64,000 bases of DNA, taken from IMG/VR virus record IMGVR_UViG_3300025930_000007, positions 1 to 64,000 of that record. One strand, 5' to 3'. Shown one piece after another: positions 1,001-17,709 of the stretch. The notes under the pieces were generated by a model. The model saw only the letters and a program-made list of their open reading frames with translations, did no database searches and was not told where the DNA came from. Numbering within the stretch: the first letter of the stretch is position 1; each line of letters starts with the position of its first letter. The translations under genes were made by a program, and so were the position numbers.

Positions 1001-1104
1001 TTGCTACCGAGAGCTCCTTGAAGTAGACTTTGTAAGTCGAAGGTCTCCTCCCCCGGGATCTTCTTGATCCGTTAACGGATGTCCGCCCAAGGGAGAATCC
1101 CTTG
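1001..1104 (+). promoter_or_regulatory. Sigma70-type promoter plus conserved leader element, copy 1
   Basis: TTGCTA-17-TAGACT; hairpin GAAGGTCTC/CTCCCCC/GGGATCTTC; TCCGCCC at 1082-1088; SD and TTG start inside CCAAGGGA-GAA-TCCCTTGG hairpin. Confidence 0.8.
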
Positions 1105-3165
1105 GCCTCTCGCCTCCCAGACGGTTCCATTCAACTCTCCGATGGACGCATCGTCTACGCGAACTCCGTCATTTTGGGCGCTGATCTCTGCGAGATCGTG
1201 CCTCTGTGCGTTCCGCCGCCGGCGTGGCCCTTCGTTTCGGGTGGCGGCGGCGGTGGCGCGGGCCCGCAAGGCCCCGCGGGACCTGCAGGGTCGGGCGGCG
1301 GCGGTGCCGGCACGCAAGGCCAGCAGGGTTTCCAGGGAACAAATCCCGGACCTGCAGGACCGCAGGGTAATAACGGACCTCAGGGCTTCCAGGGCCTGGC
1401 AGGATCTGGAGCCCAGGGCCCTCAAGGTCTGCTTGGAAGCCAGGGAAATCAAGGGACTGCCGGAACCCAAGGCTTCCAGGGCCTGACCGGCGCCGGAGTT
1501 CAAGGCGCTCAGGGAAATCAGGGAACCGCGGGAACTCAGGGCTTCCAGGGCTTTCAAGGCGGCCTGAACCCCGACCTCTTCGCTTCGACCCGCATTGTCA
1601 GTTTGATCCCGGGAGAGGGGACAGATCTCACCATCTCTGCGGCTATCGCGGCATTGCCAGCCGCGGGCGGTGACATTTACGTCAAGCCCGGGACATATCC
1701 GATCGCAGCCTCGCTGGACTTCACCACCAAAGTGGTGAGGATCCGCGGCGCTGGGACCAGCATGAACTTCGCAACCGGACCTACGACACTGGTTCCTGCC
1801 GCAGGAATCTCGCTCTTCAAAAACGGCGCTGCGGGCTGCTCTATCGAGGACATGACCATTGAGGGAGACAACACCTCAGCCCAGGTCCTTTACGAGGGCA
1901 GCACCGATATCCGCTTCACCCGCATAGACTGCCACGATGTTGCGGGCATCATCAAGGGGACGCCTGAAGCCCTCTTCCGCGACTCCTTCGTGAACATCCC
2001 GAGCGGTCCTGCAGTCGGCGACCGGTTCTTCTGGCAGGGCGGCGCGGCCGGCGGGACGCTCATCTGGGACAATCTGGAAGTTTTCATCACCGGGTCGGGA
2101 GCGACCTTGATGAGCGGCGTCACGGCAGGCGCCAACGGTCCGACGTTCAAGGTCGTGAACTCCTACACCGGCGGCGGTGGCGGCGGCGGTGCGACGAACT
2201 TCTGGTTCGCCCAGGTCATCGACTGGGTCAACTTCGATTTCGACAATGGCCAGTTCGAGATCAGTGGCGCCCGGAACAACATCGTCAACTGCAACTTCCT
2301 GGACTGCTCGATCAAGTTCCTCGCCGTCTGGAACTTCGTCTCCAATTCCAACTTCTCCCAGGGCGGAACGAATGGCGGCGGCGGGATCTTCGATGCTCAG
2401 TTGTCCTTTGTCCAAAGCCTTGCCGGATTCCCGATCCAGAGCACCGTGACGGGGTGCAACTTCTACGGAAACGCTGTCTCCAACAAAGGTATCTCGATCA
2501 CGGGTCCCGCCGGTGCCTCGAGCGTTTCGGTGACGATCAGCGGCTGCAACTTCAGCAACCACACGCTGAACGACATCTACATCTCTGCCGGCCTGGACAT
2601 CATGATCACCGGATGCGTCTTCGACCACAGCACGGGAGCGAATGTCGACGCGATCGAGATCGTGGCTGGAGCGTCCTTCTCCGGCAGGGTCAATATCGTC
2701 GGGAATACCTTCGGAAGCGGCTATGCGCTTACCGTCAGTACCGCAGGGTTCAACGGCACCATCGCGAACAATATCAACCTTCTCACCGTATCCGACACAG
2801 GGAACGGCAACATCTGGACGGGCAATACAAATTTCGATCCCAGCGGAATCACCGGCAGCGCGGCATCAGACCTCATCAACGACACCAACGTCATCGGTCC
2901 AGTTGCGGCAGACACTCTTCTGAATCTTTTCTATCGGACTGTTACGGTAGACGCGAGCGGAGCTGCCCGGACCATCACGCTACCCACGGCCGCTTCCGCC
3001 AAGTGGCGGAAGTACATCATCAAGAAGGTCGATGCCTCGGCCAACACGGTTACCGTGGACGCGGACGGCGCCGAAACGATCGATGGCGCTCTGACATACG
3101 TTCTGATCGCGCAGTATCAGAGCGTCGAGATCCAGAGCGACGGTTCGACCTGGTGGATCATCTAG
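1102..3165 (+). CDS. Collagen-stalk fibre protein 1 with pectin-lyase-like beta-helix head
   Basis: Shared N-terminus MASRLPDGSIQ..PPPAWPF, G-X-Q repeats, 'AAIAALPAAGGDIYVKPGTY' tailspike-type motif, C-terminal 'TITLPTAA..KKVDASANTVTV..ETIDG' domain. Confidence 0.85.
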   Translation: MASRLPDGSIQLSDGRIVYANSVILGADLCEIVPLCVPPPAWPFVSGGGGGGAGPQGPAGPAGSGGGGAGTQGQQGFQGTNPGPAGPQGNNGPQGFQGLAGSGAQGPQGLLGSQGNQGTAGTQGFQGLTGAGVQGAQGNQGTAGTQGFQGFQGGLNPDLFASTRIVSLIPGEGTDLTISAAIAALPAAGGDIYVKPGTYPIAASLDFTTKVVRIRGAGTSMNFATGPTTLVPAAGISLFKNGAAGCSIEDMTIEGDNTSAQVLYEGSTDIRFTRIDCHDVAGIIKGTPEALFRDSFVNIPSGPAVGDRFFWQGGAAGGTLIWDNLEVFITGSGATLMSGVTAGANGPTFKVVNSYTGGGGGGGATNFWFAQVIDWVNFDFDNGQFEISGARNNIVNCNFLDCSIKFLAVWNFVSNSNFSQGGTNGGGGIFDAQLSFVQSLAGFPIQSTVTGCNFYGNAVSNKGISITGPAGASSVSVTISGCNFSNHTLNDIYISAGLDIMITGCVFDHSTGANVDAIEIVAGASFSGRVNIVGNTFGSGYALTVSTAGFNGTIANNINLLTVSDTGNGNIWTGNTNFDPSGITGSAASDLINDTNVIGPVAADTLLNLFYRTVTVDASGAARTITLPTAASAKWRKYIIKKVDASANTVTVDADGAETIDGALTYVLIAQYQSVEIQSDGSTWWII

Positions 3166-3175
3166 TGAGCGTGCG

Positions 3176-3955
3176 ATGAGTTTTCTTGAATCGAAGGTTA
3201 AAGGATCGATCGCGGTCGGCCGTGGGGATGGGGTAGGAATCCTTCCGGTTGGACCAGATGGCCAGGTCATTATAGCCGACAGCACTCAGCCTCTGGGAGT
3301 CAAGTACGGTAACAATGCCAGCGCCGTTGCAATGTCCATGGAGTCCCTCGCCCTCACGCAATACTTCTCAAATCTCGGGCTCAAGCCAAGCGTGCAGATC
3401 AAGTCCATGACGGAATCTCTGGACACGTTCGATGGCGTGTCCGGGGCCGGCGTGTTCAGCTATGACGGATCTCGCGCCAAGGAGACCGCCATCGCGTCGA
3501 CGTATGCCCGCTATGGTCTTGGTGCCGCGTACACGAAACTGTTGATGATCGTCGGAATGTTTCGCATGTCCACGGCAAACATGGGCATCTGGATCGCCGA
3601 CACGCTTGCGGCAAACGTACCGCAGGACGGAAATATATTCCTGAACGAGATGAACACCAATCGGACATCTCTTTATAAGCTTCCTGCTTTCTCGAACGTG
3701 ACATCGGATACGGATGTCAGCAGCACCCCGCAAACGTGGGCGCCGTACCCGATGATGGCAATTCACGTTGACCTGTCCCTGGCAACGCGCCGGATTCGCT
3801 GCTACTACCGTTGGAACGCCGAAATGTGGTGGCCTGTTCTCGACGTCGCGGACAATACGAAGATCGCCATTACGCAGATGCAGCACGCAGGCGTGCAGTT
3901 CAATTCGGGTCCAGGATTTGTCGGGTGCCCATTTGGAATTTGGGCTGACCTGTAA
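3176..3955 (+). CDS. Fibre-associated protein
   Basis: N-terminal 'KGSIAV..LPVGPDGQVIIADS' resembles a recurrent phage fibre repeat. Confidence 0.65.
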   Translation: MSFLESKVKGSIAVGRGDGVGILPVGPDGQVIIADSTQPLGVKYGNNASAVAMSMESLALTQYFSNLGLKPSVQIKSMTESLDTFDGVSGAGVFSYDGSRAKETAIASTYARYGLGAAYTKLLMIVGMFRMSTANMGIWIADTLAANVPQDGNIFLNEMNTNRTSLYKLPAFSNVTSDTDVSSTPQTWAPYPMMAIHVDLSLATRRIRCYYRWNAEMWWPVLDVADNTKIAITQMQHAGVQFNSGPGFVGCPFGIWADL

Positions 3956-4002
3956 GAAAATTCTGGTACCGGAACGACAAGATGAAGGCAGTGTTATCTC
4001 GC

Positions 4003-4111
4003 TTGCATTCCATCCGGTCATACACTAGAATTTCCTAGTCGGAGGTCTCCTCCCCCCCCTGAGGCCTCCCTGATTTCGAACTGTCGATCCGCCCCCGACC
4101 GGGGTTTCATG
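4003..4111 (+). promoter_or_regulatory. Promoter plus conserved leader element, copy 2
   Basis: TTGCAT-17-TAGAAT; hairpin GGAGGTCTC/C-rich loop/GAGGCCTCC; TCCGCCC at 4088-4094. Confidence 0.8.
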
Positions 4112-5077
4112 GCGATCAGGCTACCGGACGGCTCCATCCAGATGTCGGATGGGCGTATCATCTACGCCAATTCCATCATTCTCGCAAATGATCTGATCGA
4201 ACTCCTTCCGCTACTCATACCTCCGCCGGCGTGGCCTTTCGTCTCCGGCGGCGGTGGCGGCGGCCCAGGTCCTCAGGGGCCCGCGGGTCCCGCGGGCAGC
4301 GGCGGCGGGGGTGGCGGCGGGAGCCAGGGCACCCAAGGGTTCCAGGGAACAAATCCTGGAGTACAAGGACCTCAAGGGTTTTCCGGCGCGGCTGGAACGC
4401 AAGGCAGTCAGGGAAATCAAGGCTTCACTGGAACCGGCGCTCAAGGATTCCAAGGCCTCGGAGGTCCGCAGGGAAATCAAGGCCTCGTTGGATCTGGAGC
4501 ACAAGGAAACCAAGGCGATGAAGGGCCTCAGGGCAATCAAGGCCCTGGTGGTGCGGCCGGCGGTCCTCAAGGCAATCAAGGTCCTCAAGGCCCTCAAGGC
4601 ATCGCCGGGGTTCAGGGACCCCAGGGCTTCCAAGGATTCCAGGGCACCGGAGTCCAGGGACCACAGGGCATTCTTGGCACTCAGGGGAATCAGGGCTTCC
4701 AGGGAACCAGCGGAGCTGGCGCCGCAGCAATCTTCCAGAATGTCCAGGAAAACACACTTACCACGACGGATGCAACACCCACCGTCATTCTATCCGAGAC
4801 TATTGCGGCCGCGACAGTTGGAACTTTCCGAGTCGTGGTCGATGCTCGCTATGATGACGGATCTCTGCATGCAAGCTTCGTAAAGACAGTGAAGGTCGTG
4901 CGTGAAGGGGCCGGCGCGATTCTCGGAACGGAGAATTCCGACTATACCGACGATGAGAGCCTGGCGCTCACCGCAACGTTCACCGTTTCAGGGAACGACA
5001 TCCAAGTCACGGTGATCGGCGTCGCGGCGACCAGCATTACCTGGAAAGCGAGGATGGGTAGAGTCAATCTACCCTGA
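4109..5077 (+). CDS. Collagen-stalk fibre protein 2 with short beta-rich head
   Basis: Shared N-terminal anchor, long G-X-Q run, about 115-aa C-terminal domain. Confidence 0.85.
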   Translation: MAIRLPDGSIQMSDGRIIYANSIILANDLIELLPLLIPPPAWPFVSGGGGGGPGPQGPAGPAGSGGGGGGGSQGTQGFQGTNPGVQGPQGFSGAAGTQGSQGNQGFTGTGAQGFQGLGGPQGNQGLVGSGAQGNQGDEGPQGNQGPGGAAGGPQGNQGPQGPQGIAGVQGPQGFQGFQGTGVQGPQGILGTQGNQGFQGTSGAGAAAIFQNVQENTLTTTDATPTVILSETIAAATVGTFRVVVDARYDDGSLHASFVKTVKVVREGAGAILGTENSDYTDDESLALTATFTVSGNDIQVTVIGVAATSITWKARMGRVNLP

Positions 5078-5083
5078 TGAAAT

Positions 5084-5326
5084 ATGGCAGTAATCGCACA
5101 GATCACGATCGGGCACATCCGCATTCTGGATGTAAACGCAAACCCGAATGGATCCGTGTCCGCGCCTAAAGGTAGCCTTGCTTCCGATGAGGTTGCAGCA
5201 ATCCTTTACATCAACACCGACGGAGCAATGGCCTGGTCACAGGTTTCTGGGGCATCCTCTCTGGATCCTCGGGATGTCTTCCGCTTCAGCATGTTCCATA
5301 ACGTCGGCGTGACGGGAGGCGGCTAA
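5084..5326 (+). CDS. Small fibre-associated protein
   Basis: 'PNGSVSAPKGSLA..LYINTDG..W' motif; tightly coupled to neighbours. Confidence 0.6.
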   Translation: MAVIAQITIGHIRILDVNANPNGSVSAPKGSLASDEVAAILYINTDGAMAWSQVSGASSLDPRDVFRFSMFHNVGVTGGG

Positions 5327-5655
5327 TGCCTATAGTTGCTCTTAATCTTACTCCTGGCCTTCTAGGGACAGCAGAGACAAATCTGTTCGCCGCGATCCCG
5401 GTGGGCCATGAGTACGATCTACCCGTGATCCGTTTCGTGAACAATGACCCGTTGAACTCGCACCAGCTCAGAATCTGGAACAAAGTGGGTGCTGGCGCGG
5501 GGACGAACGCGGACATCGAGTCGATGCTGTCGATCCAGCCGCAGTCGACCTACGAACACGGGCCGCTCGCGCTTCCGGCCGGCCGCGTGATTTCGGTTGC
5601 TGCGGATGAGGCCGGATTCATTAGTTGCCGTCCTACGGGCTGGGATATCACGTAA
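5326..5655 (+). CDS. Small beta-rich structural protein
   Basis: TAATG overlap with the upstream gene, GGAGG SD. Confidence 0.65.
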   Translation: MPIVALNLTPGLLGTAETNLFAAIPVGHEYDLPVIRFVNNDPLNSHQLRIWNKVGAGAGTNADIESMLSIQPQSTYEHGPLALPAGRVISVAADEAGFISCRPTGWDIT

Positions 5656-5670
5656 GGAAGGGGAAATTAG

Positions 5671-5973
5671 ATGGGATTCAAACTTTATTCGGACCAGTTC
5701 TCGGATCTGCCGATGCTGGCCTGCGATGTCTGCGGGGAGAGAATCATCGACATCTGGAATGACCAGGCGACGGGATCTCCCGGACGCGACGGCCAGACGA
5801 CGGATGTCGTCATTCATCATGCAAGCCATGTGGTTACAGGCACGGTCACTATGGCCCTGGTCGATTTCATCCGTCTTTTCATCATCCAGAGTAGACCGGG
5901 CAACCTCGGCTCGGATGGCCAGCACGACCATGTGGACGTGCAATATCCGATGGGAGGGAGGTTCGAAGCATGA
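5671..5973 (+). CDS. Hypothetical protein with CxxC
   Basis: SD present; CDVC motif. Confidence 0.6.
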   Translation: MGFKLYSDQFSDLPMLACDVCGERIIDIWNDQATGSPGRDGQTTDVVIHHASHVVTGTVTMALVDFIRLFIIQSRPGNLGSDGQHDHVDVQYPMGGRFEA

Positions 5974-6086
5974 GCACGATGATCATCAGTCCAATCGTCA
6001 TCATCGATACTTCCTCGGCAAATCCTCAGATCGTCGAGCAGAGCGCTGGAACAGTCGGGGTGGCGATCTCCGTGATGGTGGTGTAG
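5970..6086 (+). CDS. Very small hypothetical protein (38 aa)
   Basis: ATGA overlap with upstream stop, GGGAGG SD, fills the gap exactly. Confidence 0.4.
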   Translation: MSTMIISPIVIIDTSSANPQIVEQSAGTVGVAISVMVV

Positions 6087-6087
6087 G

Positions 6088-6441
6088 ATGAGTAAATTCG
6101 TTCCGGATCCACAGATTCAGTCGCTCAAGGCGATGCGAGCCGGAGATATCGCCATCGCACTACCGACGCCATTGATAATGACGATCGGGACATCGGCTGT
6201 AGCGAGTCCGCAGCCTGTCCAGAACACTTCAATTACCGTGGTGCCCGCGGTGCCAAGCACGGAGGCCCTTGCAGGGACGCCGTCGGAAAGCCCGGTGGTA
6301 TCCAGCGCTTTCGCGACTGTTCTTTCAGCAGACCAAACTCAATCGGTAAGCGCAAGCGCAGTCGATTCTCTGGAAACGCTGGCCGGCACCCCTTCGGAGT
6401 CTCCCGTGGTTGGCGTCGCAACTGGAACTTCAGTCGTCTAA
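6088..6441 (+). CDS. Ser/Thr/Pro/Val-rich protein with an internal repeat (LAGTPSESPVV twice)
   Basis: Repeat visible in the translation. Confidence 0.6.
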   Translation: MSKFVPDPQIQSLKAMRAGDIAIALPTPLIMTIGTSAVASPQPVQNTSITVVPAVPSTEALAGTPSESPVVSSAFATVLSADQTQSVSASAVDSLETLAGTPSESPVVGVATGTSVV

Positions 6442-6454
6442 GGAGGAATTGATC

Positions 6455-7174: not shown

Positions 7175-7201
7175 GTCTTTGAAATAAAGAGGAAGAAAAC
7201 A

Positions 7202-7994: not shown

Positions 7995-8008
7995 TCACAT
8001 TATTCCTC

Positions 8009-8113
8009 TTGCTGTAAAGCTTGATGCCCTGTAGAATCTCCTAGTCGGAGGTCTCCTCCCCCGGGACCTTCTGGATCCTGTAAACGGACGTCCGCCCAAG
8101 GGAGATTCCCTTG
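8009..8113 (+). promoter_or_regulatory. Promoter plus conserved leader element, copy 3
   Basis: TTGCTG-17-TAGAAT; GGAGGTCTC/CTCCCCC/GGGACCTTC; TCCGCCC at 8091-8097; SD and TTG in a hairpin. Confidence 0.8.
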
Positions 8114-10156
8114 GCTTCTCGTCTACCAGACGGCTCAATTCAGCTCTCCGACGGCCGCATCGTCTACGCCAACTCTCTCATCCTTGGCGCTGATCTCTGC
8201 GAGATCGTGCCTCTGTGCGTTCCGCCGCCGGCGTGGCCCTTCGTCTCGGGCGGCGGCGGCGGCGGCGCGGGCCCGCAAGGCCCTGCGGGACCTGCAGGAT
8301 CTGGCGGCGGCGGTGCCGGAACTCAAGGGCAACAGGGCTTCCAGGGGACGAATCCTGGACCTGCAGGTCCGCAGGGAAATAATGGGCCTCAGGGCTTTCA
8401 AGGCTTGGCAGGATCTGGAACCCAGGGCTTCCAGGGAAGCAGTGGGCTTCAGGGAAATCAGGGAAACCAAGGTCTCACTGGAAGTCAGGGAAACCAGGGG
8501 AACCAGGGGAATGCCGGCGCTCAGGGCAATCAGGGAAATCAAGGAACCGCGGGAACCCAGGGCTTCCAGGGATTCCAAGGCCCATCGAATGCTGGTGCCG
8601 ATATCTTCGCAGCCACTCGCGTGGTCAGTCTCATTCCTGGCGATGGAACGGATCTGACCATTGCCGCGGCGATCGCGGCGCTGCCGGCTGAAGGCGGCTA
8701 CATCTACGTCAAGCAGGGGACCTATCCACAGGCCGCGACGTTGACGATGCCGGACAAACCCGTCATCATCAGGGGCTCGGGCGATGGCACCGTCATCTCT
8801 CTCGGCGCGAACGCCATCCCGGCGTTCACGATTCCCACTGGCTTGAGCGTCCGGCGCGACTATGTGTTCGAAAACATGCTCGTCACTGGCACCTCGGTTG
8901 CCAATCAAAAGATCTGGAGCATCGAGGATGCCAATGGCTTCGGTGTGGTCAGGGCGAGCCATGTAAACTCCACGGAAATCCAGTTCCCCATCCACATCAC
9001 GGACGGCTTCGGAACCGAGATTACGACCGTCTGCCTGGACGACTGCCACTTCCGCTTGCTGGCCGATGGATCGAGCATCCTGGTCAATCAACCAGCGCTC
9101 ACGGCCGTGCCCACGAACGTGTGGATGCAGCGCGTCTGGTTCTATACCGAATACTCCGATGCGATCACTGGAGCGCTTACCAGCGATGCTGTCTTTGCCA
9201 CAAGCATCAACTTCCTGGGAGAAGATTGCGTTCTGGCCATCGGCACGAGCTCGATTGTCGGGTGCTTGAATCTTACGGACAGCCATATCTTCAACTTCGG
9301 CCCGGGCGCGAACCCGGTCATCTCAGTATTTGGCGATGACTTCGGCATCATCCCCGACTGCCTCGTAGGCTGCAGCGGTCAGTTCGTCAACTTCAGCTTG
9401 GAAGGAAACGGCTGCGCCGTGATTGGCGGCAGGTATCGCTCCTGCAGTTTCACGGATGGAGCGATCAGCTTCTTCACGGACATATTCTTCTTCACTGATC
9501 TTACGGTGGAGTCGGCCGTCATCATCGGCACCGGCAATACATTCATCAAAGGCTGCGAGTTCACGAACAAGGGCACAACCTTCGTCCTGGACGGGAACTT
9601 TGCATCCATCGTCGGTTGCGAGTTCTCTCTGATCAGCTATGTCGGGCTGACCTCCGTCATCCGGACTACGAATGGTACCGCGAAGATCGCCGACAACCGC
9701 TTCGTGGCGAACACGGTGCCGGCGATCCTGGAAGCTGGTGCCATCTCCACGAACAATATCGACAATAACCGGTGGGCTACCAATCCGACGCTTCTGAATG
9801 ATTCCGACGCGGTCGTGAACGGCTTCAAGCGGAAGAACATCACTGGCGGCGCGACCGTAGATGCCTTGACGGCGGTCTTTACGCACGTAAATGACAAAGG
9901 TTTGGCCGGGGCAGGAAGCCTCAAGAACACTGGCGCGAATGACCTGACGGTCAGACGGACCGTGACCGACGGTTACGGAACGACCGACTTCCAGGAAGAT
10001 GTGGTTCTGTCGGGCGCGTCGATTCAATGGCCCATGGACACCGCCATCGGGACGGCGTTCTCAGCGTATGTGTCCTTCACGATCTCCGTCAAGTCGACCA
10101 CGCCGGGGAGTCCGACGACCTATGATCTCAGGCACTCTTCGACGGGAGCATACTGA
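8111..10156 (+). CDS. Collagen-stalk fibre protein 3, beta-helix head plus C-terminal 'KNTGAN' domain
   Basis: Shared anchor, G-X-Q repeats, 'IYVKQGTY' motif. Confidence 0.85.
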   Translation: MASRLPDGSIQLSDGRIVYANSLILGADLCEIVPLCVPPPAWPFVSGGGGGGAGPQGPAGPAGSGGGGAGTQGQQGFQGTNPGPAGPQGNNGPQGFQGLAGSGTQGFQGSSGLQGNQGNQGLTGSQGNQGNQGNAGAQGNQGNQGTAGTQGFQGFQGPSNAGADIFAATRVVSLIPGDGTDLTIAAAIAALPAEGGYIYVKQGTYPQAATLTMPDKPVIIRGSGDGTVISLGANAIPAFTIPTGLSVRRDYVFENMLVTGTSVANQKIWSIEDANGFGVVRASHVNSTEIQFPIHITDGFGTEITTVCLDDCHFRLLADGSSILVNQPALTAVPTNVWMQRVWFYTEYSDAITGALTSDAVFATSINFLGEDCVLAIGTSSIVGCLNLTDSHIFNFGPGANPVISVFGDDFGIIPDCLVGCSGQFVNFSLEGNGCAVIGGRYRSCSFTDGAISFFTDIFFFTDLTVESAVIIGTGNTFIKGCEFTNKGTTFVLDGNFASIVGCEFSLISYVGLTSVIRTTNGTAKIADNRFVANTVPAILEAGAISTNNIDNNRWATNPTLLNDSDAVVNGFKRKNITGGATVDALTAVFTHVNDKGLAGAGSLKNTGANDLTVRRTVTDGYGTTDFQEDVVLSGASIQWPMDTAIGTAFSAYVSFTISVKSTTPGSPTTYDLRHSSTGAY

Positions 10157-10379: not shown

Positions 10380-12071
10380 ATGACGATACAATATAACGCT
10401 GTTCCGGACCGCGCGGCGACTATCGTGGTCCATCCCACGCCTGGTATCGGCGACGCGACGACCATTGCCGATGGCCTCAGGTTGCTTCCCGCAGGCGGCG
10501 GGGACATTTTCGTGCGCGAAGGGACGTATCCGATCTCTGCCACGATCACGTTGCCGGTGGGTAAGCCGGTCGCGATCCGCGGCGTGGGAAATGCTGCGAT
10601 CATCGATCTCGGTGCCAACGCGATCCCGGCCTTCACGATTCCTGACGGGGCGACCGTAAACACTCCCGTCATCTTCGATGGCTTCAAAGTCACCGGGAAT
10701 GAGACGGCTGGACAAAAATTGCTCGTTTACGGAGACAACAGCGGCCTGGTCGAAGTCTACATGGAGAACATCGTCACGACTGGAGTCGAGACGACGATCG
10801 ATTCCACGAGCAACGCCTCGGCATCCTCTACCCCGGGCCAGGATGATCCGCGCTTCCATCTCCTCCGGTGCCGGATCCGTCCCTGCGCCACCAACAACAG
10901 CGTCATCCTCCACAATACCGGCTTCGGCCTTCCGCGCGCCTGGCTGACCGAAGTCGAGTTCATCGGGGACTCCCTCTTCGCCATTCCTGCGCTCCGGACA
11001 GCCCCGCTCTTCGGCAGGTTGGCCGATGACAGTTGGTTCGGCGACTGCTACCTGGACAGTTGCGAGATGTCGATCGGGACGGACGAAAGCGACTTCGCGA
11101 CGTTCGAGTGCTTCAATAGCACTCTCTGGAACAATGACAACGTCAATCTGACCGTCACCTACTTCCTGTTCGGCAGCTTTGAGGGCTTGAACCCGGGCAC
11201 CGTCCGCGACTCGGCCTGCCGCGGCATCTACTTCGAGGCTGAAGAAGCCGGGTCGAACTTCTTTTCGAACTGGCTCCAGGACTGCCCCATCGGGATCTTC
11301 GGCGCTGGTGTCGTGGTCGGTGACAACCAGATCATCGAAGTGCGGAATCCATGGCCTGTCGCTCATCCCTTCGGCATCCAGATTCAGAATGAGCAGGCGG
11401 TAATCCGAAACAACCGGTTCCGGTTCCGGCAGACGACTCCCCAGCAGATCATTGATGTCGAGGTCTCCACAAGAATTCTCGGAAACGATTTCTCCGAGTG
11501 CTTCCCCCCTGTAAACGGGACGATCCTGCTCAATAGCGGCGAGAACATCATCACCGACAACTATTTCACATTCGCGCCGACCACGGGACCGAACGTCAAC
11601 GAGACAGGCGGCGGTGGTGCGAGCTATTACGACAACAACAACCGCCTCTTCACGAACAAGACGGGCGGCGGCCCCATCGTGGATCCGATCCTCCCTCATG
11701 GAAACGGGTCGACTATTCAGGGGACCACTGGCGTAGCTGGGAACAGTTCCGTGGGCGGGACGGCCACAAACAGCATCATCGTCTGGTATAGGAATCCCTA
11801 TGGCCTGGCGATGGTGAAGGGATATATCCAGAACACGGGCGCGAACAATATTACCGTCCAGGAGACCTTCCGCCTCGATACCTTAGGCACATTCACGAAG
11901 TCTACGGTAGTAGCCCCGGGTGCTAAGCTGACGCTCGACCCGTATGACTTCGCGGGAACAGCTATCCCGGCGGGTTCATTCCAGTGCTACGACTACCGAG
12001 CGGACGTTTCAGGTACTACGATTTCCTGGTATACGTTCTTCCCGATGCCTGGCGGCGTGCTCGGAACCTAA
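10380..12071 (+). CDS. Beta-helix fibre/spike head lacking the anchor and collagen
   Basis: 'GDIFVREGTYP' motif; C-terminal 'IQNTGANN' domain. Confidence 0.8.
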   Translation: MTIQYNAVPDRAATIVVHPTPGIGDATTIADGLRLLPAGGGDIFVREGTYPISATITLPVGKPVAIRGVGNAAIIDLGANAIPAFTIPDGATVNTPVIFDGFKVTGNETAGQKLLVYGDNSGLVEVYMENIVTTGVETTIDSTSNASASSTPGQDDPRFHLLRCRIRPCATNNSVILHNTGFGLPRAWLTEVEFIGDSLFAIPALRTAPLFGRLADDSWFGDCYLDSCEMSIGTDESDFATFECFNSTLWNNDNVNLTVTYFLFGSFEGLNPGTVRDSACRGIYFEAEEAGSNFFSNWLQDCPIGIFGAGVVVGDNQIIEVRNPWPVAHPFGIQIQNEQAVIRNNRFRFRQTTPQQIIDVEVSTRILGNDFSECFPPVNGTILLNSGENIITDNYFTFAPTTGPNVNETGGGGASYYDNNNRLFTNKTGGGPIVDPILPHGNGSTIQGTTGVAGNSSVGGTATNSIIVWYRNPYGLAMVKGYIQNTGANNITVQETFRLDTLGTFTKSTVVAPGAKLTLDPYDFAGTAIPAGSFQCYDYRADVSGTTISWYTFFPMPGGVLGT

Positions 12072-12302: not shown

Positions 12303-14645
12303 ATGGCTATTCGGCTTCCAGACGGCTCGATCCAGATGGCGGACGGGCGTATTCTCTACGCCAACTCCGTCATCCTCGCAGCCGATCTGATCGAGATCCT
12401 TCCGCTCCTCACGCCTCCGCCGGCGTGGCCTTTCGTCTCGGGCGGCGGCGGCGGCGGCGCGGGCCCGCAAGGCCCCGCGGGACCTGCAGGATCGGGCGGC
12501 GGCGGCGCCGGCACGCAAGGCCAGCAGGGTTTCCAGGGAACGAATCCCGGACCTGTAGGACCGCAGGGCAATAACGGACCTCAGGGCTTCCAGGGCCTGG
12601 CGGGATCCGGAGCTCAGGGCTTCCAGGGAAGCAATGGGCCTCAGGGAAATCAGGGGACTGCCGGAACTCAGGGCTTCCAGGGTCTTACGGGGGCTGGAGT
12701 TCAAGGAAACCAGGGAAATCAGGGCATTGCCGGAGCTGGAACTCAAGGGTTTCAGGGTAATCAGGGCCTGACCGGTGCAGGAGTTCAGGGAAACCAAGGC
12801 AATCAAGGATTGCAAGGGTTCCAAGGTCTAACAGGTGCAGGGACTCAAGGTCCCCAAGGGCCTCAGGGTCTACAGGGGAGTCAAGGTTTCCAAGGCATCA
12901 CAGGAGCTGGAGTCCAGGGCGCGCAGGGACTCCAAGGCCCATCCAGTGCGGGCGCTGACATCTTCGCCGCGACACGCGTCGTCAGCCTGATCGCTGGCGA
13001 CGGCACCGATCTGACGGTAGCCGCCGCGATTGCTGCACTTCCGGCCGAGGGCGGCCGGATCTACGTGAAACAGGGGACGTACACGCTCGCCGCGACGAAC
13101 TCGCTGCCGGACAAGCCGGTCGACATCATCGGCTCCGGCGACGGCACGATCTTCGACCTGACCACGAGCGCCATCGCCGCCTTCACGATCCCGGACATTC
13201 TCACGGAGCGTCGATCCTACACCTTCCAGAACTTCAAGGTGATCGGGAACTCGACAGCCAGCCAGAACGTCGTCGAAATCGCGGATTCCCAATTCTTCGC
13301 GGTCACGAGCATCAAGCGCGTGAACACCGAGGGCATCAAATTCCCCGTCGAGATCACGGGCGGCGGCTTCTCCGCGACCGAGGCCACCCAGATCGAAATC
13401 GAAGACTCCTGGTTCGTCCCCGTTGCGGCTGGTGACGGCGCCCTCGCCAATAACAGCGGGTTCACGAGCTCAGTAGCGGTCACGTGCCGGAACGTGAACT
13501 TCTACGATCCGAACGATAATACGATCGGCGGCACGATCAACAACGACAACTTCTCGAGCCTGGACATCGTCTTCTACGACTGCAACATCTCCTACACCGG
13601 GGAAGACGGCCTCAATACGATCCGGGCTGAGAACAGCAGGATCTTCAACTATCTCGGTCAGGGCGTCGCCACGAACCCGAACTCGATCTTTCTGGGCGGC
13701 CTTGGCGTAGACGACAATAACATCCACCCCTCGTGCTCCTTCGTGAACTGCAACGTCGTGGGAATGTCCTGGATCTTCGGCGAGCAGGTCACCGCCACCG
13801 GTGGCTGGTGGGATTCGAACGTCGTCCAGGCAGAAGTTGTAAACGGGAAATGTACTTTTGATGGGGTTGTCTTCCGCTGCGCCGCGGACGTTCCGCAGTT
13901 CCCGCACTTCGGGACGGACCCCACCGCATATATTCGGGACGGCGGCGAGCTCAATATCATCGGGTGCCGCTTTACGAACCCTGGCGGCCTCGTGAACCGC
14001 TACATCGAAGCTGCGGACTCGATGTACATCGCCTTCTGTGCCTTCGCCAACCAGGCGGCCGGGGCGAATAATTGCGGCATCCATGTAACGGGCCCGAACA
14101 ACATCATCGTCGGCTGCGACTTCGATGCTCTTTGGGCGGCTCCTCCGATCAAGGAGGAAGGTGCCAATGCCGTCGCGAACAACTATACCGACTGCATTGG
14201 CTTGAACGGCAACGGCGGCACGGAGTCGGTCTACGTGACGCCATCGAATATCAGCCCCTCGACCTTCAACGGTTCGGCGCTCTTCCACGCGACAGGGTCG
14301 ACCACCGACGCCCTTGTTGTGATCAAAATGACCCTCTCCGGCCTGGGCACGTCGGACTCCGGCACGAGGATCAACCCGGCTGGCCTGACCGGGCAAGGCA
14401 CGATCAAGAACACGGGTGCCCAGTCCATGGACGTGAAGGAAACGGTTACGGATGCCTTCGGGGTTACCGATAGCGTGACTACGACAGTCACTGCAGGAAA
14501 CGACCTCCTCCTTACGATGGCCGTGAATATAAACACGGCGCGGCCACCCTATGTGTCCTATAAGATCGAGGTAAAGAGCACTGCGGCTGGCGTTCCTACG
14601 ACCTACAGCTACCAGCACACCATGAACTCCGAGGTGACTTGGTGA
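12303..14645 (+). CDS. Collagen-stalk fibre protein 4, beta-helix head plus 'KNTGAQ' domain
   Basis: Shared anchor, G-X-Q repeats; head N- and C-termini homologous to fibre 3. Confidence 0.85.
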   Translation: MAIRLPDGSIQMADGRILYANSVILAADLIEILPLLTPPPAWPFVSGGGGGGAGPQGPAGPAGSGGGGAGTQGQQGFQGTNPGPVGPQGNNGPQGFQGLAGSGAQGFQGSNGPQGNQGTAGTQGFQGLTGAGVQGNQGNQGIAGAGTQGFQGNQGLTGAGVQGNQGNQGLQGFQGLTGAGTQGPQGPQGLQGSQGFQGITGAGVQGAQGLQGPSSAGADIFAATRVVSLIAGDGTDLTVAAAIAALPAEGGRIYVKQGTYTLAATNSLPDKPVDIIGSGDGTIFDLTTSAIAAFTIPDILTERRSYTFQNFKVIGNSTASQNVVEIADSQFFAVTSIKRVNTEGIKFPVEITGGGFSATEATQIEIEDSWFVPVAAGDGALANNSGFTSSVAVTCRNVNFYDPNDNTIGGTINNDNFSSLDIVFYDCNISYTGEDGLNTIRAENSRIFNYLGQGVATNPNSIFLGGLGVDDNNIHPSCSFVNCNVVGMSWIFGEQVTATGGWWDSNVVQAEVVNGKCTFDGVVFRCAADVPQFPHFGTDPTAYIRDGGELNIIGCRFTNPGGLVNRYIEAADSMYIAFCAFANQAAGANNCGIHVTGPNNIIVGCDFDALWAAPPIKEEGANAVANNYTDCIGLNGNGGTESVYVTPSNISPSTFNGSALFHATGSTTDALVVIKMTLSGLGTSDSGTRINPAGLTGQGTIKNTGAQSMDVKETVTDAFGVTDSVTTTVTAGNDLLLTMAVNINTARPPYVSYKIEVKSTAAGVPTTYSYQHTMNSEVTW

Positions 14646-14862: not shown

Positions 14863-15681
14863 ATGACCGCAACGGCGAGAGCTAATCCTGGAACTACCGC
14901 CCAATTCGTCCAGAACCCCACCGGGTTTGTGGATGGGATCCTATCGGGCGAAATTCTCGCCCAGGCGGTCCCGGCGATGAGCGTTCGGACCGTGAGCTTG
15001 GTCGTCATGCGGAACGGTCTCCAGGAGTCCATTCCCGATCAGACCCTGACGATTACTGCGGCGCCTGCTGCAGGCTTGGTCCGTTGCGATATGGTTCAGT
15101 GGAATGGGACCACGATCAACGTCAAGAATGGCACCGCGGCGGCGATCTCTTCGGCAGACGCACCTACGCCGGACTCTGGCTTCATCCCCCTCGCTCTTAC
15201 GATGGTGTTCAACGGCGACACCACCGTCAGGGATATGGGCAAGCTCGACAGCACATCGTCGAGCAAGGGTCGTATTTATGCCTATTATTTCGCGCGCCGC
15301 GGTATCTTCGCCTCTTCCCAGGCAGCGCAGGACACGACGACGAGCGGCGACGACGTGGAAGTCGCGCTGCCGCTCTACCATCCCAGAAGCAGCGTGATTC
15401 ATATCAAGGGAGCAGGCTCCGCGACTCAAAACTCGAACTTGTCCGGTCTTCAGGTGATCTTGAGACTGGACGGCACACTCATCACGCGATCCCAGGCCAA
15501 GAATCAGTGGAACAGCAATACCGGTTCCATCGGCGACACGGGCAACCAGGATACCGTTGAGACCGAGATGCCGCGCGCCGGCGTGGCCTCCGGAACTCAT
15601 CGCTGGGTGGTCAACTGGACCTTCCGCGCCGCCGGACAAACGCTGACCTATCGGCTTCTGCAGTTGCAGGAAGTCCTGTAA
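14863..15681 (+). CDS. Structural/fibre protein, tandem paralog A
   Basis: First 29 aa identical to the next gene; 'RCDMVQW..KNGTAAA..APTP..IPLA' motif. Confidence 0.75.
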   Translation: MTATARANPGTTAQFVQNPTGFVDGILSGEILAQAVPAMSVRTVSLVVMRNGLQESIPDQTLTITAAPAAGLVRCDMVQWNGTTINVKNGTAAAISSADAPTPDSGFIPLALTMVFNGDTTVRDMGKLDSTSSSKGRIYAYYFARRGIFASSQAAQDTTTSGDDVEVALPLYHPRSSVIHIKGAGSATQNSNLSGLQVILRLDGTLITRSQAKNQWNSNTGSIGDTGNQDTVETEMPRAGVASGTHRWVVNWTFRAAGQTLTYRLLQLQEVL

Positions 15682-15690
15682 GGCGAAACT

Positions 15691-16518
15691 ATGACCGCGA
15701 CAGCGAGAGCTAACCCTGGAACCACCGCCCAATTCGTCCAGAACCCCACCGGGTTTGTGGATGGGATTCTCAGCGGTGTGATCCAGGCTGGTGCTGGCGC
15801 GATGCAGGTCAATTCCTCGAGCCTGATCGTCATGAGGAACGGCATTCAGGAAACCGTTCCTGACACGACGCTCAACGTCACGGCCGCCGACGCTACGAAC
15901 CCTCGCGTGGACATGGTCCAATGGAACGGCACCACGCTTTCCATGAAGAACGGGACAGCGGCGGCGATCGCCACCATGAATGCCCCGACGCCCGATGTAG
16001 GCAACATTCCGCTGGCGCTGATCTTCATCTACGCGAACGGGACGACGATCAAGAACCTCGGTCAGCAGGATGCGACCGGACAGTTTAATGCCATCTTCGC
16101 GTATTATTATGCGCGCCGCGGCCTCTATGCATGCCTCCTTTCGAGGCAGTCGTCGTCGGGACCCTTCGGTGGTACTGCCGACCCGATCGTGGCTCTGCCG
16201 GTGTACAACGCTCGTTCCGGCATCTATCGATTCGAGTACACCGGAAACCTCACGGTAGCAGATGGAAGCACCGTGTGCAGGCTCCAGGTCATTGTAGCCT
16301 TGGATGGGACTCAGTTTACTGGAGCCGGCGGCCCGAACACGACGGTATCTCAGGTCGACACAGCGGCCAGCACCAGCAGTGGTTCGTGCAATGCTCATGT
16401 GAACTACTCTCGAGGGATCATCAGTTCTGGTGTTCACCGCTGGAATCCCTTCATCACGGGGGGAGGCAATACACAGAGTCTGGGCTACCGCCAGGCGGAG
16501 CTCCAGGAGATCCTCTAA
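15691..16518 (+). CDS. Structural/fibre protein, tandem paralog B
   Basis: 'ADATNPRVDMVQW..APTP..IPLA' phage fibre-type motif. Confidence 0.75.
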   Translation: MTATARANPGTTAQFVQNPTGFVDGILSGVIQAGAGAMQVNSSSLIVMRNGIQETVPDTTLNVTAADATNPRVDMVQWNGTTLSMKNGTAAAIATMNAPTPDVGNIPLALIFIYANGTTIKNLGQQDATGQFNAIFAYYYARRGLYACLLSRQSSSGPFGGTADPIVALPVYNARSGIYRFEYTGNLTVADGSTVCRLQVIVALDGTQFTGAGGPNTTVSQVDTAASTSSGSCNAHVNYSRGIISSGVHRWNPFITGGGNTQSLGYRQAELQEIL

Positions 16519-17709
16519 ATGGCTACGCGGCTTTCAGACGGCTCGATCCAGATGGCGGATGGGCGTATCCTGTACGCCAACTCCGTCATCCTCGCAGCCG
16601 ATCTGATCGAGATCCTTCCGCTCCTCATTCCGCCTCCGGCATGGCCTTTCATTTCCGGTGGCGGCGGAGGCGGCGCTGGAACTCCTGGAGCGCGCGGTGC
16701 AGACGGAGCTCCTGGAGCGAATGGCCCTCAAGGCTTCCAGGGACAGAATGGTGCCTTCGGCGGCCCCCAAGGCTCGCAGGGCTTCCAAGGCATGGATGGG
16801 GGTGAGGGGTTCCAAGGCAATCAGGGCTTCCAGGGAACGGGTGCTCAGGGTCCTCAGGGAACGAATCCTGGCGCTCAGGGGCCGCAAGGAAACTTTGGAG
16901 CCCAAGGCTTTCAGGGCTTTCAGGGCATCGATGGGACTCAAGGTACCCAGGGCATTCAAGGGCTGCAGGGAACCAATCCTGGCGTTCAAGGCCCGCAGGG
17001 CAACGACGGGATGCAGGGGATCAACGGTACGCAGGGCCTTCAGGGTTTCCAAGGCAATGAAGGCCTTCAGGGCCTGCAGGGAACGAACCCGGGCGTCCAA
17101 GGGCCTCAGGGCAACCAAGGCTTCCAAGGGATGAACGGAGTCGACGGACCGCAGGGTTTCCAGGGCATTCAGGGCCTGCAGGGAACGAATCCCGGCGTTC
17201 AAGGGCCTCAGGGCAACCAAGGGTTTCAGGGAACGGGAGCGCAAGGCCTGCAGGGTTTCCAAGGCTCCGGCGGCCTTCTCGGGTTTCAAGCACAGGATGC
17301 CGGCACTCTAAGTATCAGCGCGGCTAGTGGAGTCACGGATCTGCCGTCATCCACGCTCAGCTTCACCTTGGCCGCCACCACGCGCGTCGAGTTTTTTGCG
17401 ACCATTTTCAGCAATCAGATGTCACAAGGCCAGCCGGACTCCGGATTCTCCGGCCGTACGCTCCTGCGCGACGTCGGGAACGCGATCACCTACGATCTGG
17501 TTCAGCATGTGAATGCTGGCGCTACCGGTGGAGCTGGCTCATGGACCGGGACAATCGATGCGGGCGTTAGCGGTCGCCGTCTTTTGACGCTTGCTGCCGG
17601 GTCATACACCTTCAAGCTCCAAGCCGTCTGCGACAGCGGTACGGGACTGGACACATTGAATTACACATATCCGCTCGTCTTTACGGTCAAGGACTACGGG
17701 CCGCCGTAA
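16519..17709 (+). CDS. Collagen-stalk fibre protein 5
   Basis: Shared anchor, about 200 aa of G-X-Q, beta-sandwich-like head. Confidence 0.85.
   Translation: MATRLSDGSIQMADGRILYANSVILAADLIEILPLLIPPPAWPFISGGGGGGAGTPGARGADGAPGANGPQGFQGQNGAFGGPQGSQGFQGMDGGEGFQGNQGFQGTGAQGPQGTNPGAQGPQGNFGAQGFQGFQGIDGTQGTQGIQGLQGTNPGVQGPQGNDGMQGINGTQGLQGFQGNEGLQGLQGTNPGVQGPQGNQGFQGMNGVDGPQGFQGIQGLQGTNPGVQGPQGNQGFQGTGAQGLQGFQGSGGLLGFQAQDAGTLSISAASGVTDLPSSTLSFTLAATTRVEFFATIFSNQMSQGQPDSGFSGRTLLRDVGNAITYDLVQHVNAGATGGAGSWTGTIDAGVSGRRLLTLAAGSYTFKLQAVCDSGTGLDTLNYTYPLVFTVKDYGPP

What the first reader, a model, noticed from the sequence alone, without database searches (positions are those of the whole stretch)
1102..17709. 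Plug-and-play collagen fibre arsenal with mosaic genes
Seen: five genes share a roughly 50-aa anchor (RL[PS]DGSIQ..YANS.IL..DL.E..PL..PPPAWPF.SGGGGG), Gln-rich collagen stalks of different lengths and different heads. The first 300 nt or so of fibres 1 and 3 are nearly identical. Fibre 4 is a mosaic: anchor like fibres 2 and 5, early stalk like 1 and 3, head ends like 3. Three fibres have their own leader-element promoter. Inference: interchangeable surface fibres docking at one site and shuffled by recombination.
Basis: partly seen in the sequence, partly recalled or inferred. Interest (0 to 1): 0.6.

Follow-up and report, generated by a model that had tools for sequence, protein, structure and literature searches.

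The report
Modular collagen-stalked fibre genes, huge soil virus
A roughly 349-kb soil virus carries at least six fibre genes that share one short N-terminal "plug", a collagen stalk of variable length and swappable tailspike-like or small heads, and these genes are self-contained, recombining cassettes, but no capsid or tail gene could be found, so what they plug into is unknown.

Summary
Five window genes share a 46-52 aa N-terminal module (67-98% aa identity), a Gly6 hinge, and Gln-rich collagen stalks of 106-207 aa in these five (74 aa in the sixth, outside the window) with different heads. A sixth full copy and a partial seventh lie outside the window.

F1 and F3 are 99% identical in protein over 100 codons but only 88% in DNA, so this is old paralogy under purifying selection (anchor dN/dS 0.04-0.24), not recent copying.

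F4 is a true mosaic: no permutation in 200,000 reached the observed signal. An orthologous F1 locus in a relative shows patchwork identity of 40-95%. Across 32 family members, anchor, stalk and head types occur in all combinations.

Relatives carry anchor-fibre cassettes at four or more further backbone sites, twice next to an HNH endonuclease.

The leader is real and genome-wide. It is a sigma70-like promoter, a 5' hairpin with a C-rich loop and an invariant TCCGCCC box, found at about 16 sites and absent from Rfam.

The F1 head is a tailspike-type beta-helix (Z 26.7 to the cyanophage Pam1 tailspike).

Docking at one virion site remains an inference. The closed circle of about 349 kb shows no recognisable terminase, HK97 capsid, portal or sheath. 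I class it as a new variant of a known kind.

The parts
1001..1101 (+). Leader of F1: -35 TTGCTA (1001-1006), 17-nt spacer, -10 TAGACT (1024-1029), 5' hairpin with a C-rich loop (about 1039-1063), CCGCCC box (1083-1088), SD-like GGGAGA
1102..3165 (+). F1 (687 aa, TTG start): anchor 1102-1257, collagen stalk to about 1575 (106 aa, about 30 nm), right-handed beta-helix head, C-terminal end domain of about 85 aa (about 2905-3165)
3176..3955 (+). 259-aa accessory gene directly behind F1. It has a homologue in the fibre cluster of a relative (L022). No family match
4003..4108 (+). Leader of F2: TTGCAT, 17-nt spacer, TAGAAT, C-loop hairpin, CCGCCC box (4089-4094)
4109..5077 (+). F2 (322 aa): anchor, stalk of 154 aa (about 44 nm), small head of 118 aa (head cluster H2, shared with P0001, P0005, P0006)
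8009..8110 (+). Leader of F3: TTGCTG, 17-nt spacer, TAGAAT, C-loop hairpin, CCGCCC box (8092-8097)
8111..10156 (+). F3 (681 aa, TTG start): anchor of the Cys30/Cys36 subtype like F1, stalk of 109 aa, beta-helix head with a 'KST..PTTY' type C-end
10380..12071 (+). H6 (563 aa): head-only paralogue of the F3/F4 heads, without anchor or collagen. A similar 603-aa gene follows fibre P0012 in relative L008
12303..14645 (+). F4 (780 aa): mosaic. The anchor is of F5/F2 type up to about 12418; nt about 120-330 of the gene are of F1/F3 type; the stalk is 167 aa; the beta-helix head has an F3-type C-end. It has no leader, and its start abuts the stop of ORF 12081-12302
14863..16518 (+). Two paralogous accessory genes (14863-15681, 15691-16518). 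Their first 29 aa are identical (87% nt identity over 90 nt) and the rest is diverged. A homologue sits beside fibre P0011 in relative L017. The second abuts the F5 start
16519..17709 (+). F5 (396 aa): anchor, longest stalk (207 aa, about 59 nm, four GTNPG interruptions), small head of 139 aa (cluster H3, shared with P0002-P0004). No leader
17783..22052 (+). A further leader (17783-17887), then a 219-aa gene, then C7 (18567-20918) and C8 (20928-22052). C7 is a collagen fibre with a different N-terminus and matches phrog_6320 'tail fiber' beyond its collagen part. C8 shares a repeat region with C7

Best explanation
The five genes, plus a sixth elsewhere in the genome, encode a family of homotrimeric fibres. 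Each has four modules.

1. An N-terminal anchor of about 46 aa (a predicted beta-hairpin, PDGSIQxxDGRIxYAN, then DLxEIxPLxxPPPAWPF). I infer that it docks every family member to the same partner on the particle.
2. A Gly6 hinge.
3. A Gln-rich collagen triple helix whose length sets the reach, about 21-59 nm in this genome.
4. A C-terminal head that binds, and in the beta-helix types probably cleaves, a host surface glycan.

The virus therefore carries several specificities at once. The genes behave as self-contained cassettes. Some have their own sigma70-like promoter and structured leader. Others are translationally coupled to a small accessory gene. Homologous recombination at the conserved module borders (anchor/hinge, stalk repeats, helix cap, C-end domain) reshuffles the modules between paralogues and between related viruses. 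Whole cassettes also sit at different backbone sites in relatives.

Shown: the architecture, the purifying selection on the anchor, the mosaicism, the cassette dispersal, the leader, and the tailspike fold of the F1 head.
Inferred: trimeric docking to a single virion site, enzymatic activity of the heads, and the role of the leader.
For: Shared anchor and hinge.

Anchor dN/dS is 0.04-0.24 while dS runs from 0.3 to above 1.5.

Collagen.

The anchor family is N-terminal in about 75 representative clusters, with many different C-termini. One member (P0134) is three tandem anchors in a single chain, which matches trimer stoichiometry.

F1 head: the AF2 model has pLDDT 84.8. VIA-align gives Z 26.7 (rmsd 3.3 over 398 residues) to the cyanophage Pam1 tailspike, 26.1 to CBA120 TSP3 and 24.5 to the Sf6 tailspike. 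Close homologues carry Pfam Beta_helix or Pectate_lyase_3.

The F1 C-end domain is 42-50% identical to annotated tail proteins of cultured tailed viruses. A relative has, at F1's position, an anchor-collagen fibre with a head of SNSAFG-type repeats that matches PHROG tail-spike and virion-structural families.

Recombination.

Cassette dispersal: with an HNH endonuclease beside the cassette in L008 and L021.

Leader.

No reverse transcriptase is present, so a diversity-generating retroelement does not explain the variation.
Against: No docking partner was identified. The closed circle of about 349 kb gave no Pfam terminase, HK97 or NCLDV capsid, or sheath. The portal family reached only 13 bits. 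About 70 of the larger ORFs gave no PHROG structural hit. Virion association therefore rests on domain homology and analogy.

Fibre cassettes in relatives lie among replication-type and small genes rather than in a tail module.

No RNA run was available, so the promoter and leader are unverified.
Confidence: 0.6

Rival explanations
1. The fibres are capsid-vertex or surface fibres of a non-tailed, membrane-containing giant bacterial virus, not tail fibres. On this reading the anchor works like the N-terminal tail of the adenovirus fibre or of PRD1 P5, which inserts at the penton. This is a variant of the best explanation that differs in where the fibres dock.
For: No terminase, HK97 capsid, portal or sheath was found in the full circle. 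A HerA/FtsK-type ATPase of 603 aa is present. A block at 30-55 kb encodes at least 15 proteins with C-terminal membrane anchors, several of them under the same leader type as the fibres. No protein in the genome exceeds 1211 aa, and that one is a glycosyltransferase, so nothing resembles a tape measure or a large baseplate hub. From my own knowledge, PRD1 P5 combines an N-terminal vertex domain, a collagen-like shaft and a trimeric knob.
Against: No double-jelly-roll capsid protein was detected (PF04451: no hit; the control genomes also gave none, so the test is weak). The HerA-like protein has winged-helix-like repeats and lies among replication-type genes on the other arm. The F1 C-end domain and the C7 C-terminal part match tail proteins of tailed viruses. 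Only part of the ORFs was scanned and none of the candidates was folded.
Confidence: 0.2
2. The conserved N-terminus is not a virion-docking module. It is instead a targeting, export or assembly signal, for example a chaperone-binding or register-setting element, or a signal that sends the fibres to the host envelope or another structure. The fibres would then decorate something other than the virion.
For: No partner and no structural genes were found. The genes have sigma70-like promoters of their own and lie scattered like morons. The genome also encodes many membrane proteins and at least five glycosyltransferases. From my own knowledge and PMC10470788, BclA-type spore fibres use just such an N-terminal targeting domain followed by collagen.
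Against: The N-terminus has no signal-peptide features; it reads MA(I/S)RLPDGS and is not hydrophobic. The heads have the tailspike fold and tail-protein end domains. A single-chain triple anchor (P0134) and a partial-anchor protein, F7, that lacks collagen fit a structural plug better than an export signal.
Confidence: 0.12
3. The likenesses come only from tandem duplication followed by divergence, or from chimeric metagenome assembly, without real recombination.
For: The genes are clustered paralogues. Short-read assemblies break inside the anchor and proximal stalk.
Against: The F4 triplet tests gave 0 and 11 of 200,000. The orthologous locus in L027 alternates between 40% and 95% identity. 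All module combinations exist in independent samples. An independent contig, L026, is 99.97% identical over 3450 nt, and Logan contig X2 record 10 spans 1371-5900 without a difference. The F4 region itself was not re-checked in a second assembly.
Confidence: 0.04

Closest known systems
Modular receptor-binding proteins of phages with a conserved N-terminal anchor and an exchangeable depolymerase module (Klebsiella phages; CBA120 TSP1-4). PMC6872550, PMC8262889
   Same: [quoted passage not shown] One genome carries several such proteins. The heads are beta-helix tailspikes (CBA120 TSP3 Z 26.1).
   Different: The anchor here matches no Pfam or PHROG family. Six proteins share the same anchor, whereas those systems use a branched set of different anchors. 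A collagen stalk sits between anchor and head. The genes are dispersed cassettes with their own leader. No tail was identified.
Collagen-like repeats flanking the host-range region of Streptococcus thermophilus phage antireceptors (PMC5601072, citing Duplessis and Moineau 2001), and collagen-like tail-fibre PHROGs (phrog_5073, 6320, 819)
   Same: Gly-X-Y repeats separate the domains of a receptor-binding protein and coincide with module borders. The stalks here match those PHROGs.
   Different: The matches cover only the collagen part. The anchor and most heads are unrelated, and the scale differs: six or more paralogues in one genome.
Adenovirus fibre and PRD1 spike protein P5 (own knowledge)
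   Same: A short conserved N-terminal tail docks a trimer at a capsid vertex. The shaft varies in length and the C-terminal knob is variable. P5 has a collagen-like stretch.
   Different: No sequence relation was tested or seen. No double-jelly-roll capsid or penton protein was found here. The resemblance is functional only.
BclA family of Bacillus and Clostridioides spore fibres (PMC10470788, PMC13188886)
   Same: A short N-terminal domain gives stable attachment to a trimeric basal protein. It is followed by a collagen-like, glycosylated stalk and a globular trimeric head. Several paralogues share the targeting domain. The genome here also encodes many glycosyltransferases and a rhamnosyl O-methyltransferase domain.
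   Different: These are bacterial spore proteins, not viral ones. There is no sequence similarity. Glycosylation of the present fibres is untested.
SPP1 gp12, a collagen-like trimeric capsid decoration protein (PMC7602432)
   Same: A collagen-like trimer binds a capsid site and may serve in adhesion.
   Different: gp12 is a single small protein without exchangeable heads, and no homology was found.

Membership tests
Collagen triple-helix repeat proteins (Pfam PF01391) | Runs of Gly-X-Y triplets that score over the Pfam gathering cut-off (27.2 bits) | tested here: met
   F2 32.2, F3 36.4, F4 35.4 and F5 68.4 bits. F1 scores 24.3 bits, below the cut-off, but has the same stalk. There are 24-63 triplets per stalk, with Gln at Y in 53-62%.
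Collagen triple-helix repeat proteins | Homotrimeric triple helix | not testable with these tools
Trimer state is inferred from the repeat pattern and from the single-chain triple anchor P0134.
Right-handed beta-helix tailspike / polysaccharide depolymerase | Parallel beta-helix fold | tested here: met
   The F1 head model has pLDDT 84.8. VIA-align Z is 26.7, 26.1 and 24.5 to the Pam1, CBA120 TSP3 and Sf6 tailspikes, and 25 to the AlgE epimerases. Homologues carry PF13229 or PF12708. The F3 head folded alone failed (pLDDT 34). F3, F4 and H6 are assigned by 28-36% BLASTP identity to each other and to F1.
Right-handed beta-helix tailspike / polysaccharide depolymerase | Catalytic acidic residues in the groove, and glycan cleavage | not tested
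   No active-site mapping or assay was done. A shared fold shows no function.
Tail fibres of tailed phages (Caudoviricetes) | The genome encodes the large terminase, portal, HK97-fold capsid and tail proteins to which fibres attach | tested here: not met
   PF03237, PF17289, PF03354, PF05065 and PF04984 gave no hit over cut-off in G000. PF03237 and PF05065 gave none in G001. PF04860 reached only 13.1 bits. No PHROG structural hit appeared among about 70 ORFs other than the fibres. Divergent genes may have been missed, so this lowers the claim 'tail fibre', not the claim 'virion fibre'.
Tail fibres of tailed phages (Caudoviricetes) | Domains homologous to known tail-fibre or tailspike proteins | tested here: met
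   The F1 C-end domain is 42-50% identical to tail proteins of Thermocrinis, Halorubrum, Gordonia and Pseudomonas viruses. C7 residues 257-768 match phrog_6320 'tail fiber'. P0243 matches phrog_4636 'tail spike'.
PRD1/adenovirus-type vertex fibres | Double-jelly-roll capsid and penton proteins, FtsK/HerA packaging ATPase, internal membrane | tested here: inconclusive
   PF04451 gave no hit, but the control genomes gave none either. A HerA/DUF87 ATPase is present. Many tail-anchored membrane proteins are present. No capsid candidate was folded.
Diversity-generating retroelement targets | A reverse transcriptase with template and variable repeats near the fibre gene | tested here: not met
   PF00078 gave no hit in G000 or G001.
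Known RNA leader families (Rfam 15) | A match to a curated covariance model | tested here: not met
   No family reached E of 0.01 or better on 950-8150. Only tRNAs and a tmRNA reached gathering score in the window.

The most novel reading that the evidence does not exclude
The fibres may belong to a giant (about 349 kb), non-tailed, membrane-containing virus of soil bacteria that lacks the HK97 capsid, terminase and portal set. On this reading the PPPAWPF anchor is a vertex- or envelope-docking peptide analogous to the adenovirus fibre tail. It would be co-regulated, through a new C-loop/TCCGCCC leader, with a battery of more than 15 tail-anchored membrane proteins.
Probability: 0.15. Interest if true: 0.9.

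Novelty: new variant of a known kind. Interest (0 to 1): 0.58.

Why it matters
Modular receptor-binding proteins are the main determinant of phage host range and the main handle for engineering it. This family shows an unusually clean natural design: one small anchor that fits no known family, a stalk of adjustable length, and at least 14 head types.

The genes are packaged as autonomous cassettes that move between genome positions and between related viruses. These viruses are widespread in rhizosphere soils; the stretch was found near-identically in 16 studies.

The family gives a defined set of junctions for testing how fibres are exchanged in nature. The anchor can also serve as bait to find the docking protein, and through it the still unrecognised structural genes, of a 349-kb virus lineage.

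Tried and rejected
- megablast of the region and tblastn of three neighbouring proteins against 50,697 phage records: no match.
- Anchor profile against IMG/VR: no relative. Against GTDB genomes: only a 14-residue motif in an Opitutaceae MAG protein, judged not homologous.
- Anchor profile against 1.84 billion representatives: the multi-stretch hits are WD40 and DUF6799 repeat proteins sharing a short PDGS..DG.I hairpin motif. I rejected them as relatives.
- Single-sequence AF2 of the F3 head: pLDDT 34, unusable.
- ESM Atlas on the anchor: no usable hit. On ORF 122010-123155: only weak ART/RES-like leads, score 0.87 and TM 0.32.
- PDB sequence search with the F2 and F5 heads, C8 and ORF 3176-3955: nothing at E of 0.01 or better.
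- The generic promoter and terminator scan does not pick up the leaders (each is under 9 of 12 to the E. coli consensus) and finds no more sites than in shuffles.
- RNAalifold on the MAFFT leader alignment found no consensus pairs, because the stems are out of register. A loop-anchored count was used instead: mean stem 6.4 bp against 3.25 in shuffles.
- Logan contigs of four runs show no head swap within this strain. The joints at 2170, 2190 and 4246 have sides of 20-24 nt on Gly-codon runs and were dismissed.
- Searching metagenome loci by handle was not possible.
- The idea that the missing contig end holds a tail module was rejected. The 82.9-kb gap carries replication and metabolism genes.

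Full report
**Setting**

The window is the first 64 kb of an IMG/VR virus record (G000, 266,490 bp, about 59% G+C) from a rhizosphere metagenome.

A second IMG/VR record of the same virus, G001, closes the gap. G001:148001-153090 equals G000:261401-266490, and G001:236009-236090 equals G000:1-82, both at 100% identity. So 82,918 bp lie between the two ends of G000, and the circle is about 349 kb.

Genes run outward on both strands from a switch point about 9 kb upstream of window position 1 and converge near 148 kb. The fibre cluster therefore lies at the start of the + strand arm. The stretch 900-5900 occurs near-identically in 20 runs from 16 soil and rhizosphere studies.

**The observation**

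Five + strand ORFs start with the same module:
- F1: 1102-3165
- F2: 4109-5077
- F3: 8111-10156
- F4: 12303-14645
- F5: 16519-17709

The module reads M-A-x-R-L-P-D-G-S-I-Q-x-x-D-G-R-I-x-Y-A-N-S, then D-L-x-E-I-x-P-L-x-x-P-P-P-A-W-P-F, then a Gly6 run. Pairwise aa identity over 52 residues is 67-98%.

A sixth full copy (F6) lies at G000:86487-87257 on the minus strand. A 179-aa protein (F7) at 155522-156061 has only the first 36 residues of the module, followed by a predicted helical, charged region. The 82.9-kb gap holds no further copy.

The stalks are collagen-like:
- Pfam Collagen is over cut-off for F2-F5. F1 scores 24.3 bits, just under the 27.2 cut-off.
- Lengths are 74-207 aa, roughly 21-59 nm.
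- Composition is about 35% Gly and 19-22% Gln, with Gln in the Y position of 53-62% of triplets.
- A recurrent one-residue interruption, GTNPG, is present.

PHROG matches ("tail fiber", "collagen like minor tail") cover only the collagen part.

The statement that F1 and F3 are nearly identical over 300 nt needs correction. They are 99% identical in protein but 88% in DNA, with 68% identity at third positions. Nei-Gojobori estimates for the anchor give dN/dS of 0.04-0.24, with dS from 0.3 (F4/F5) to saturation. The anchor is therefore kept by selection in old paralogues and is not freshly copied.

**Mosaicism**

In F4, sites that discriminate between parents follow F5 or F2 up to about nt 116 of the gene. 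They follow F1 or F3 from about nt 120 to 330. The maximum-descent statistic was reached in 0 of 200,000 permutations with F2 and F1 as parents, and in 11 of 200,000 with F2 and F3.

Comparison with relatives gives independent support. Contig L027 carries the orthologous F1 locus; its upstream 196-aa gene is 94% identical in aa. The sliding-window nt profile below is:

| Segment | Identity |
|---|---|
| Flank | 90-100% |
| Anchor | about 90% |
| Proximal stalk | 40-60% |
| First half of the beta-helix | 85-95% |
| Second half of the beta-helix | 42-65% |
| C-end domain | 80-94% |

The next fibre in L027 carries an F1-like leader and anchor (86.6% identity) where G000 has F2.

The heads fall into 14 clusters. 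All four combinations of anchor subtype (Cys30/Cys36 or hydrophobic pair) and proximal-stalk subtype (GPQGPAG or PGxRGA) occur. Within the beta-helix cluster, both stalk types, both anchor types and both C-end types occur.

No reverse transcriptase is present, so a diversity-generating retroelement is not involved.

**Cassettes**

Contigs of relatives are syntenic with the G000 backbone but hold anchor fibres at places where G000 has none:
- between the homologues of 191359-191661 and 190234-190980 (L008 and L021, both with an HNH endonuclease on the opposite strand just upstream);
- between 126157-126600 and 126934-128031 (L017);
- behind the 1211-aa glycosyltransferase at 30.1 kb (L018);
- at 229.67 kb (L020).

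At F1's own position, relative L028 has an 823-aa anchor-collagen protein. Its head consists of SNSAFG-type repeats that match PHROG "tail spike" and "virion structural" families.

Small accessory genes travel with the fibres. ORF 3176-3955 has a homologue in L022. The paralogues 14863-15681 and 15691-16518 share an identical 29-aa N-terminus and have a homologue beside the L017 fibre.

**The leader**

F1, F2 and F3 are preceded by the following elements in order:
- TTGnnn, a 17-nt spacer and TAnAnT;
- a hairpin starting a few bases after the expected start site, with YCCCC(C) in its loop;
- an invariant TCCGCCC box 22-32 nt further on;
- an SD-like GGAG and the start codon (TTG in F1 and F3).

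The same design precedes F6 and the fibres of three relatives. It also precedes about ten other G000 genes: 17901, 25200, 30147, 30827, 32428, 48209, 124615, 137786, 188164(-), 190887(-) and 231243(-).

Stem sequences differ between copies while pairing is kept. The mean contiguous stem is 6.4 bp, against 3.25 in shuffles, and the highest of 500 shuffled means was 4.38.

RNAalifold on the raw alignment found nothing, and Rfam has no match. F4 and F5 have no leader and abut the stop codon of the upstream ORF. Promoter function and the role of the RNA elements are inferred; no RNA run was available.

**The heads**

F1's head has 106 homologues. The close ones carry Pfam Beta_helix or Pectate_lyase_3, and many are anchor-less proteins with two tandem head units.

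With a 28-sequence alignment AF2 gave pLDDT 84.8. Foldseek and VIA-align place residues 1-440 of the head with phage tailspikes and polysaccharide enzymes:

| Match | Z |
|---|---|
| Cyanophage Pam1 tailspike | 26.7 |
| CBA120 TSP3 | 26.1 |
| AlgE epimerases | 25 |
| Sf6 tailspike | 24.5 |
| phi29 gp12 | 23.2 |

The last 75-87 residues of F1 are 42-50% identical to annotated tail proteins of cultured tailed viruses: Thermocrinis, Halorubrum, Gordonia and Pseudomonas viruses.

F3, F4 and the anchor-less H6 are related beta-helix heads. F2, F5 and F6 have small heads of 118-139 aa with no detectable relatives of known structure.

**What they attach to**

This is the weak point. Six-frame Pfam searches found no terminase (three families), HK97 capsid, NCLDV capsid or sheath. 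The portal family reached only 13 bits. About 70 of the larger ORFs gave no structural PHROG or Pfam hit.

The annotated content is replication, nucleotide and RNA metabolism:
- two UvrD helicases, a RepB-primase-like protein, SNF2, PolX, RNA ligases, RNR and Ro60;
- an integrase and a HerA/DUF87 ATPase;
- at least five glycosyltransferases;
- a tRNA array and a tmRNA.

Between 30 and 55 kb lie at least 15 genes for proline/alanine-rich proteins with C-terminal membrane anchors. Many of them have an N-terminal ...(L/M)G(Q/E) motif, and several sit under the same leader as the fibres.

The fibres are therefore either tail or head fibres of a tailed phage whose structural genes are too diverged to be recognised, or surface fibres of a different kind of particle. 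I keep the second reading as the novel case.

**Mechanism and comparison**

The best-supported reading is a set of trimeric fibres that share one docking module and differ in reach and specificity. They are diversified by recombination at conserved junctions and by gain and loss of whole cassettes.

This is the logic of modular receptor-binding proteins with an N-terminal anchor (PMC6872550, PMC8262889) and of collagen-flanked host-range regions (PMC5601072). In architecture it resembles the adenovirus fibre, PRD1 P5 and BclA (PMC10470788).

It differs in four ways:
- an anchor that fits no described family;
- six or more paralogues using the same anchor in one genome;
- the dispersed, leader-equipped cassette organisation;
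- the unresolved nature of the particle.

I therefore rate it a new variant of a known kind, with moderate interest.

Noticed in passing
window 30147-54715 (+ strand): A block of at least 15 small to medium proteins, rich in Pro, Ala and Gln. Each has a C-terminal hydrophobic anchor followed by basic residues. Many have an N-terminal motif ending in (L/M)G(Q/E), which could be a processing or targeting site. Three paralogues lie at 48894-50621. Several operons here start with the same leader as the fibres. None has a PHROG match.
   Followed up: partly
window 56589-62416: A tmRNA (56589-56948, 116 bits) and an array of about 21 tRNAs, including two Gly, two Gln, three Pro and three Ala. These are the residues that dominate the collagen stalks.
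   Followed up: no
G000 whole record and G001:153091-236008: G000 is not complete. A second IMG/VR record bridges its ends with 82,918 bp, giving a circle of about 349 kb. CheckV's 90-92% estimates are too high. No terminase, HK97 capsid, portal or sheath was recognisable. A HerA/DUF87 ATPase of 603 aa (G001:189056-190867, minus strand) also matches phrog_2666 'terminase large subunit' at 4e-11.
   Followed up: partly
window 14863-15681 and 15691-16518: Two paralogous 272/275-aa proteins have an identical first 29 aa (MTATARANPG...) and a diverged remainder. This may be a second family with a shared N-terminal plug. A homologue sits beside the fibre in relative L017.
   Followed up: partly
G000:155522-156061 (-) and protein P0134: F7 has only the first 36 residues of the anchor, fused to a predicted helical, charged region. 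The metagenomic protein P0134 is three tandem anchors without collagen. Either could be a cap or a competitor for the docking site.
   Followed up: no
window 26470-30105; G000:106457-108556, 109143-110156, 97302-98768, 99474-100493: There are many sugar-modifying genes: a 1211-aa protein with three glycosyltransferase regions, a GT2 fused to a rhamnosyl O-methyltransferase (CmcI) domain, GT1 and GT4 enzymes, and a nucleotide-sugar epimerase. They might glycosylate the fibres, as happens in BclA and in mimivirus fibrils.
   Followed up: no
L008:9413-9904 (-) and L021:4372-4839 (-): An HNH endonuclease gene lies directly upstream, on the opposite strand, of the fibre cassette in two relatives at the same backbone site. 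This may be a mobility helper for the cassette.
   Followed up: no
window 1102 and 8111; L018:10001; L017:8840: F1, F3 and P0013 start with TTG and P0011 with GTG, at the position where the other anchors have ATG. Non-ATG starts behind a strong leader may tune the relative amounts of each fibre.
   Followed up: no
window 13-300 and L026:1-182: The first ORF of the window has a 90.7% identical copy about 740 nt further upstream, seen in contig L026 (99.97% identical to G000), which extends 742 nt beyond the record's left end.
   Followed up: no
window 18567-22052: C7 is a collagen protein with a stalk of 336 aa (about 96 nm, Gln at Y in 79% of triplets) and a different N-terminus. Its C-terminal half has repeats of the [12 protein letters not shown] type, which C8, lacking collagen, shares.
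   Followed up: partly
window 2781-2812: In one soil run (X9) the contig covering F1 shows 10 or more clustered differences within 32 nt, in the same part of the beta-helix that diverges in relative L027. Elsewhere the strain is identical. This suggests a small recombination patch within the population.
   Followed up: no
G000:65257-66981: A Ro60/TROVE protein with a vWA domain is encoded by the virus (E 5.8e-21). No Y-RNA-like partner was looked for.
   Followed up: no
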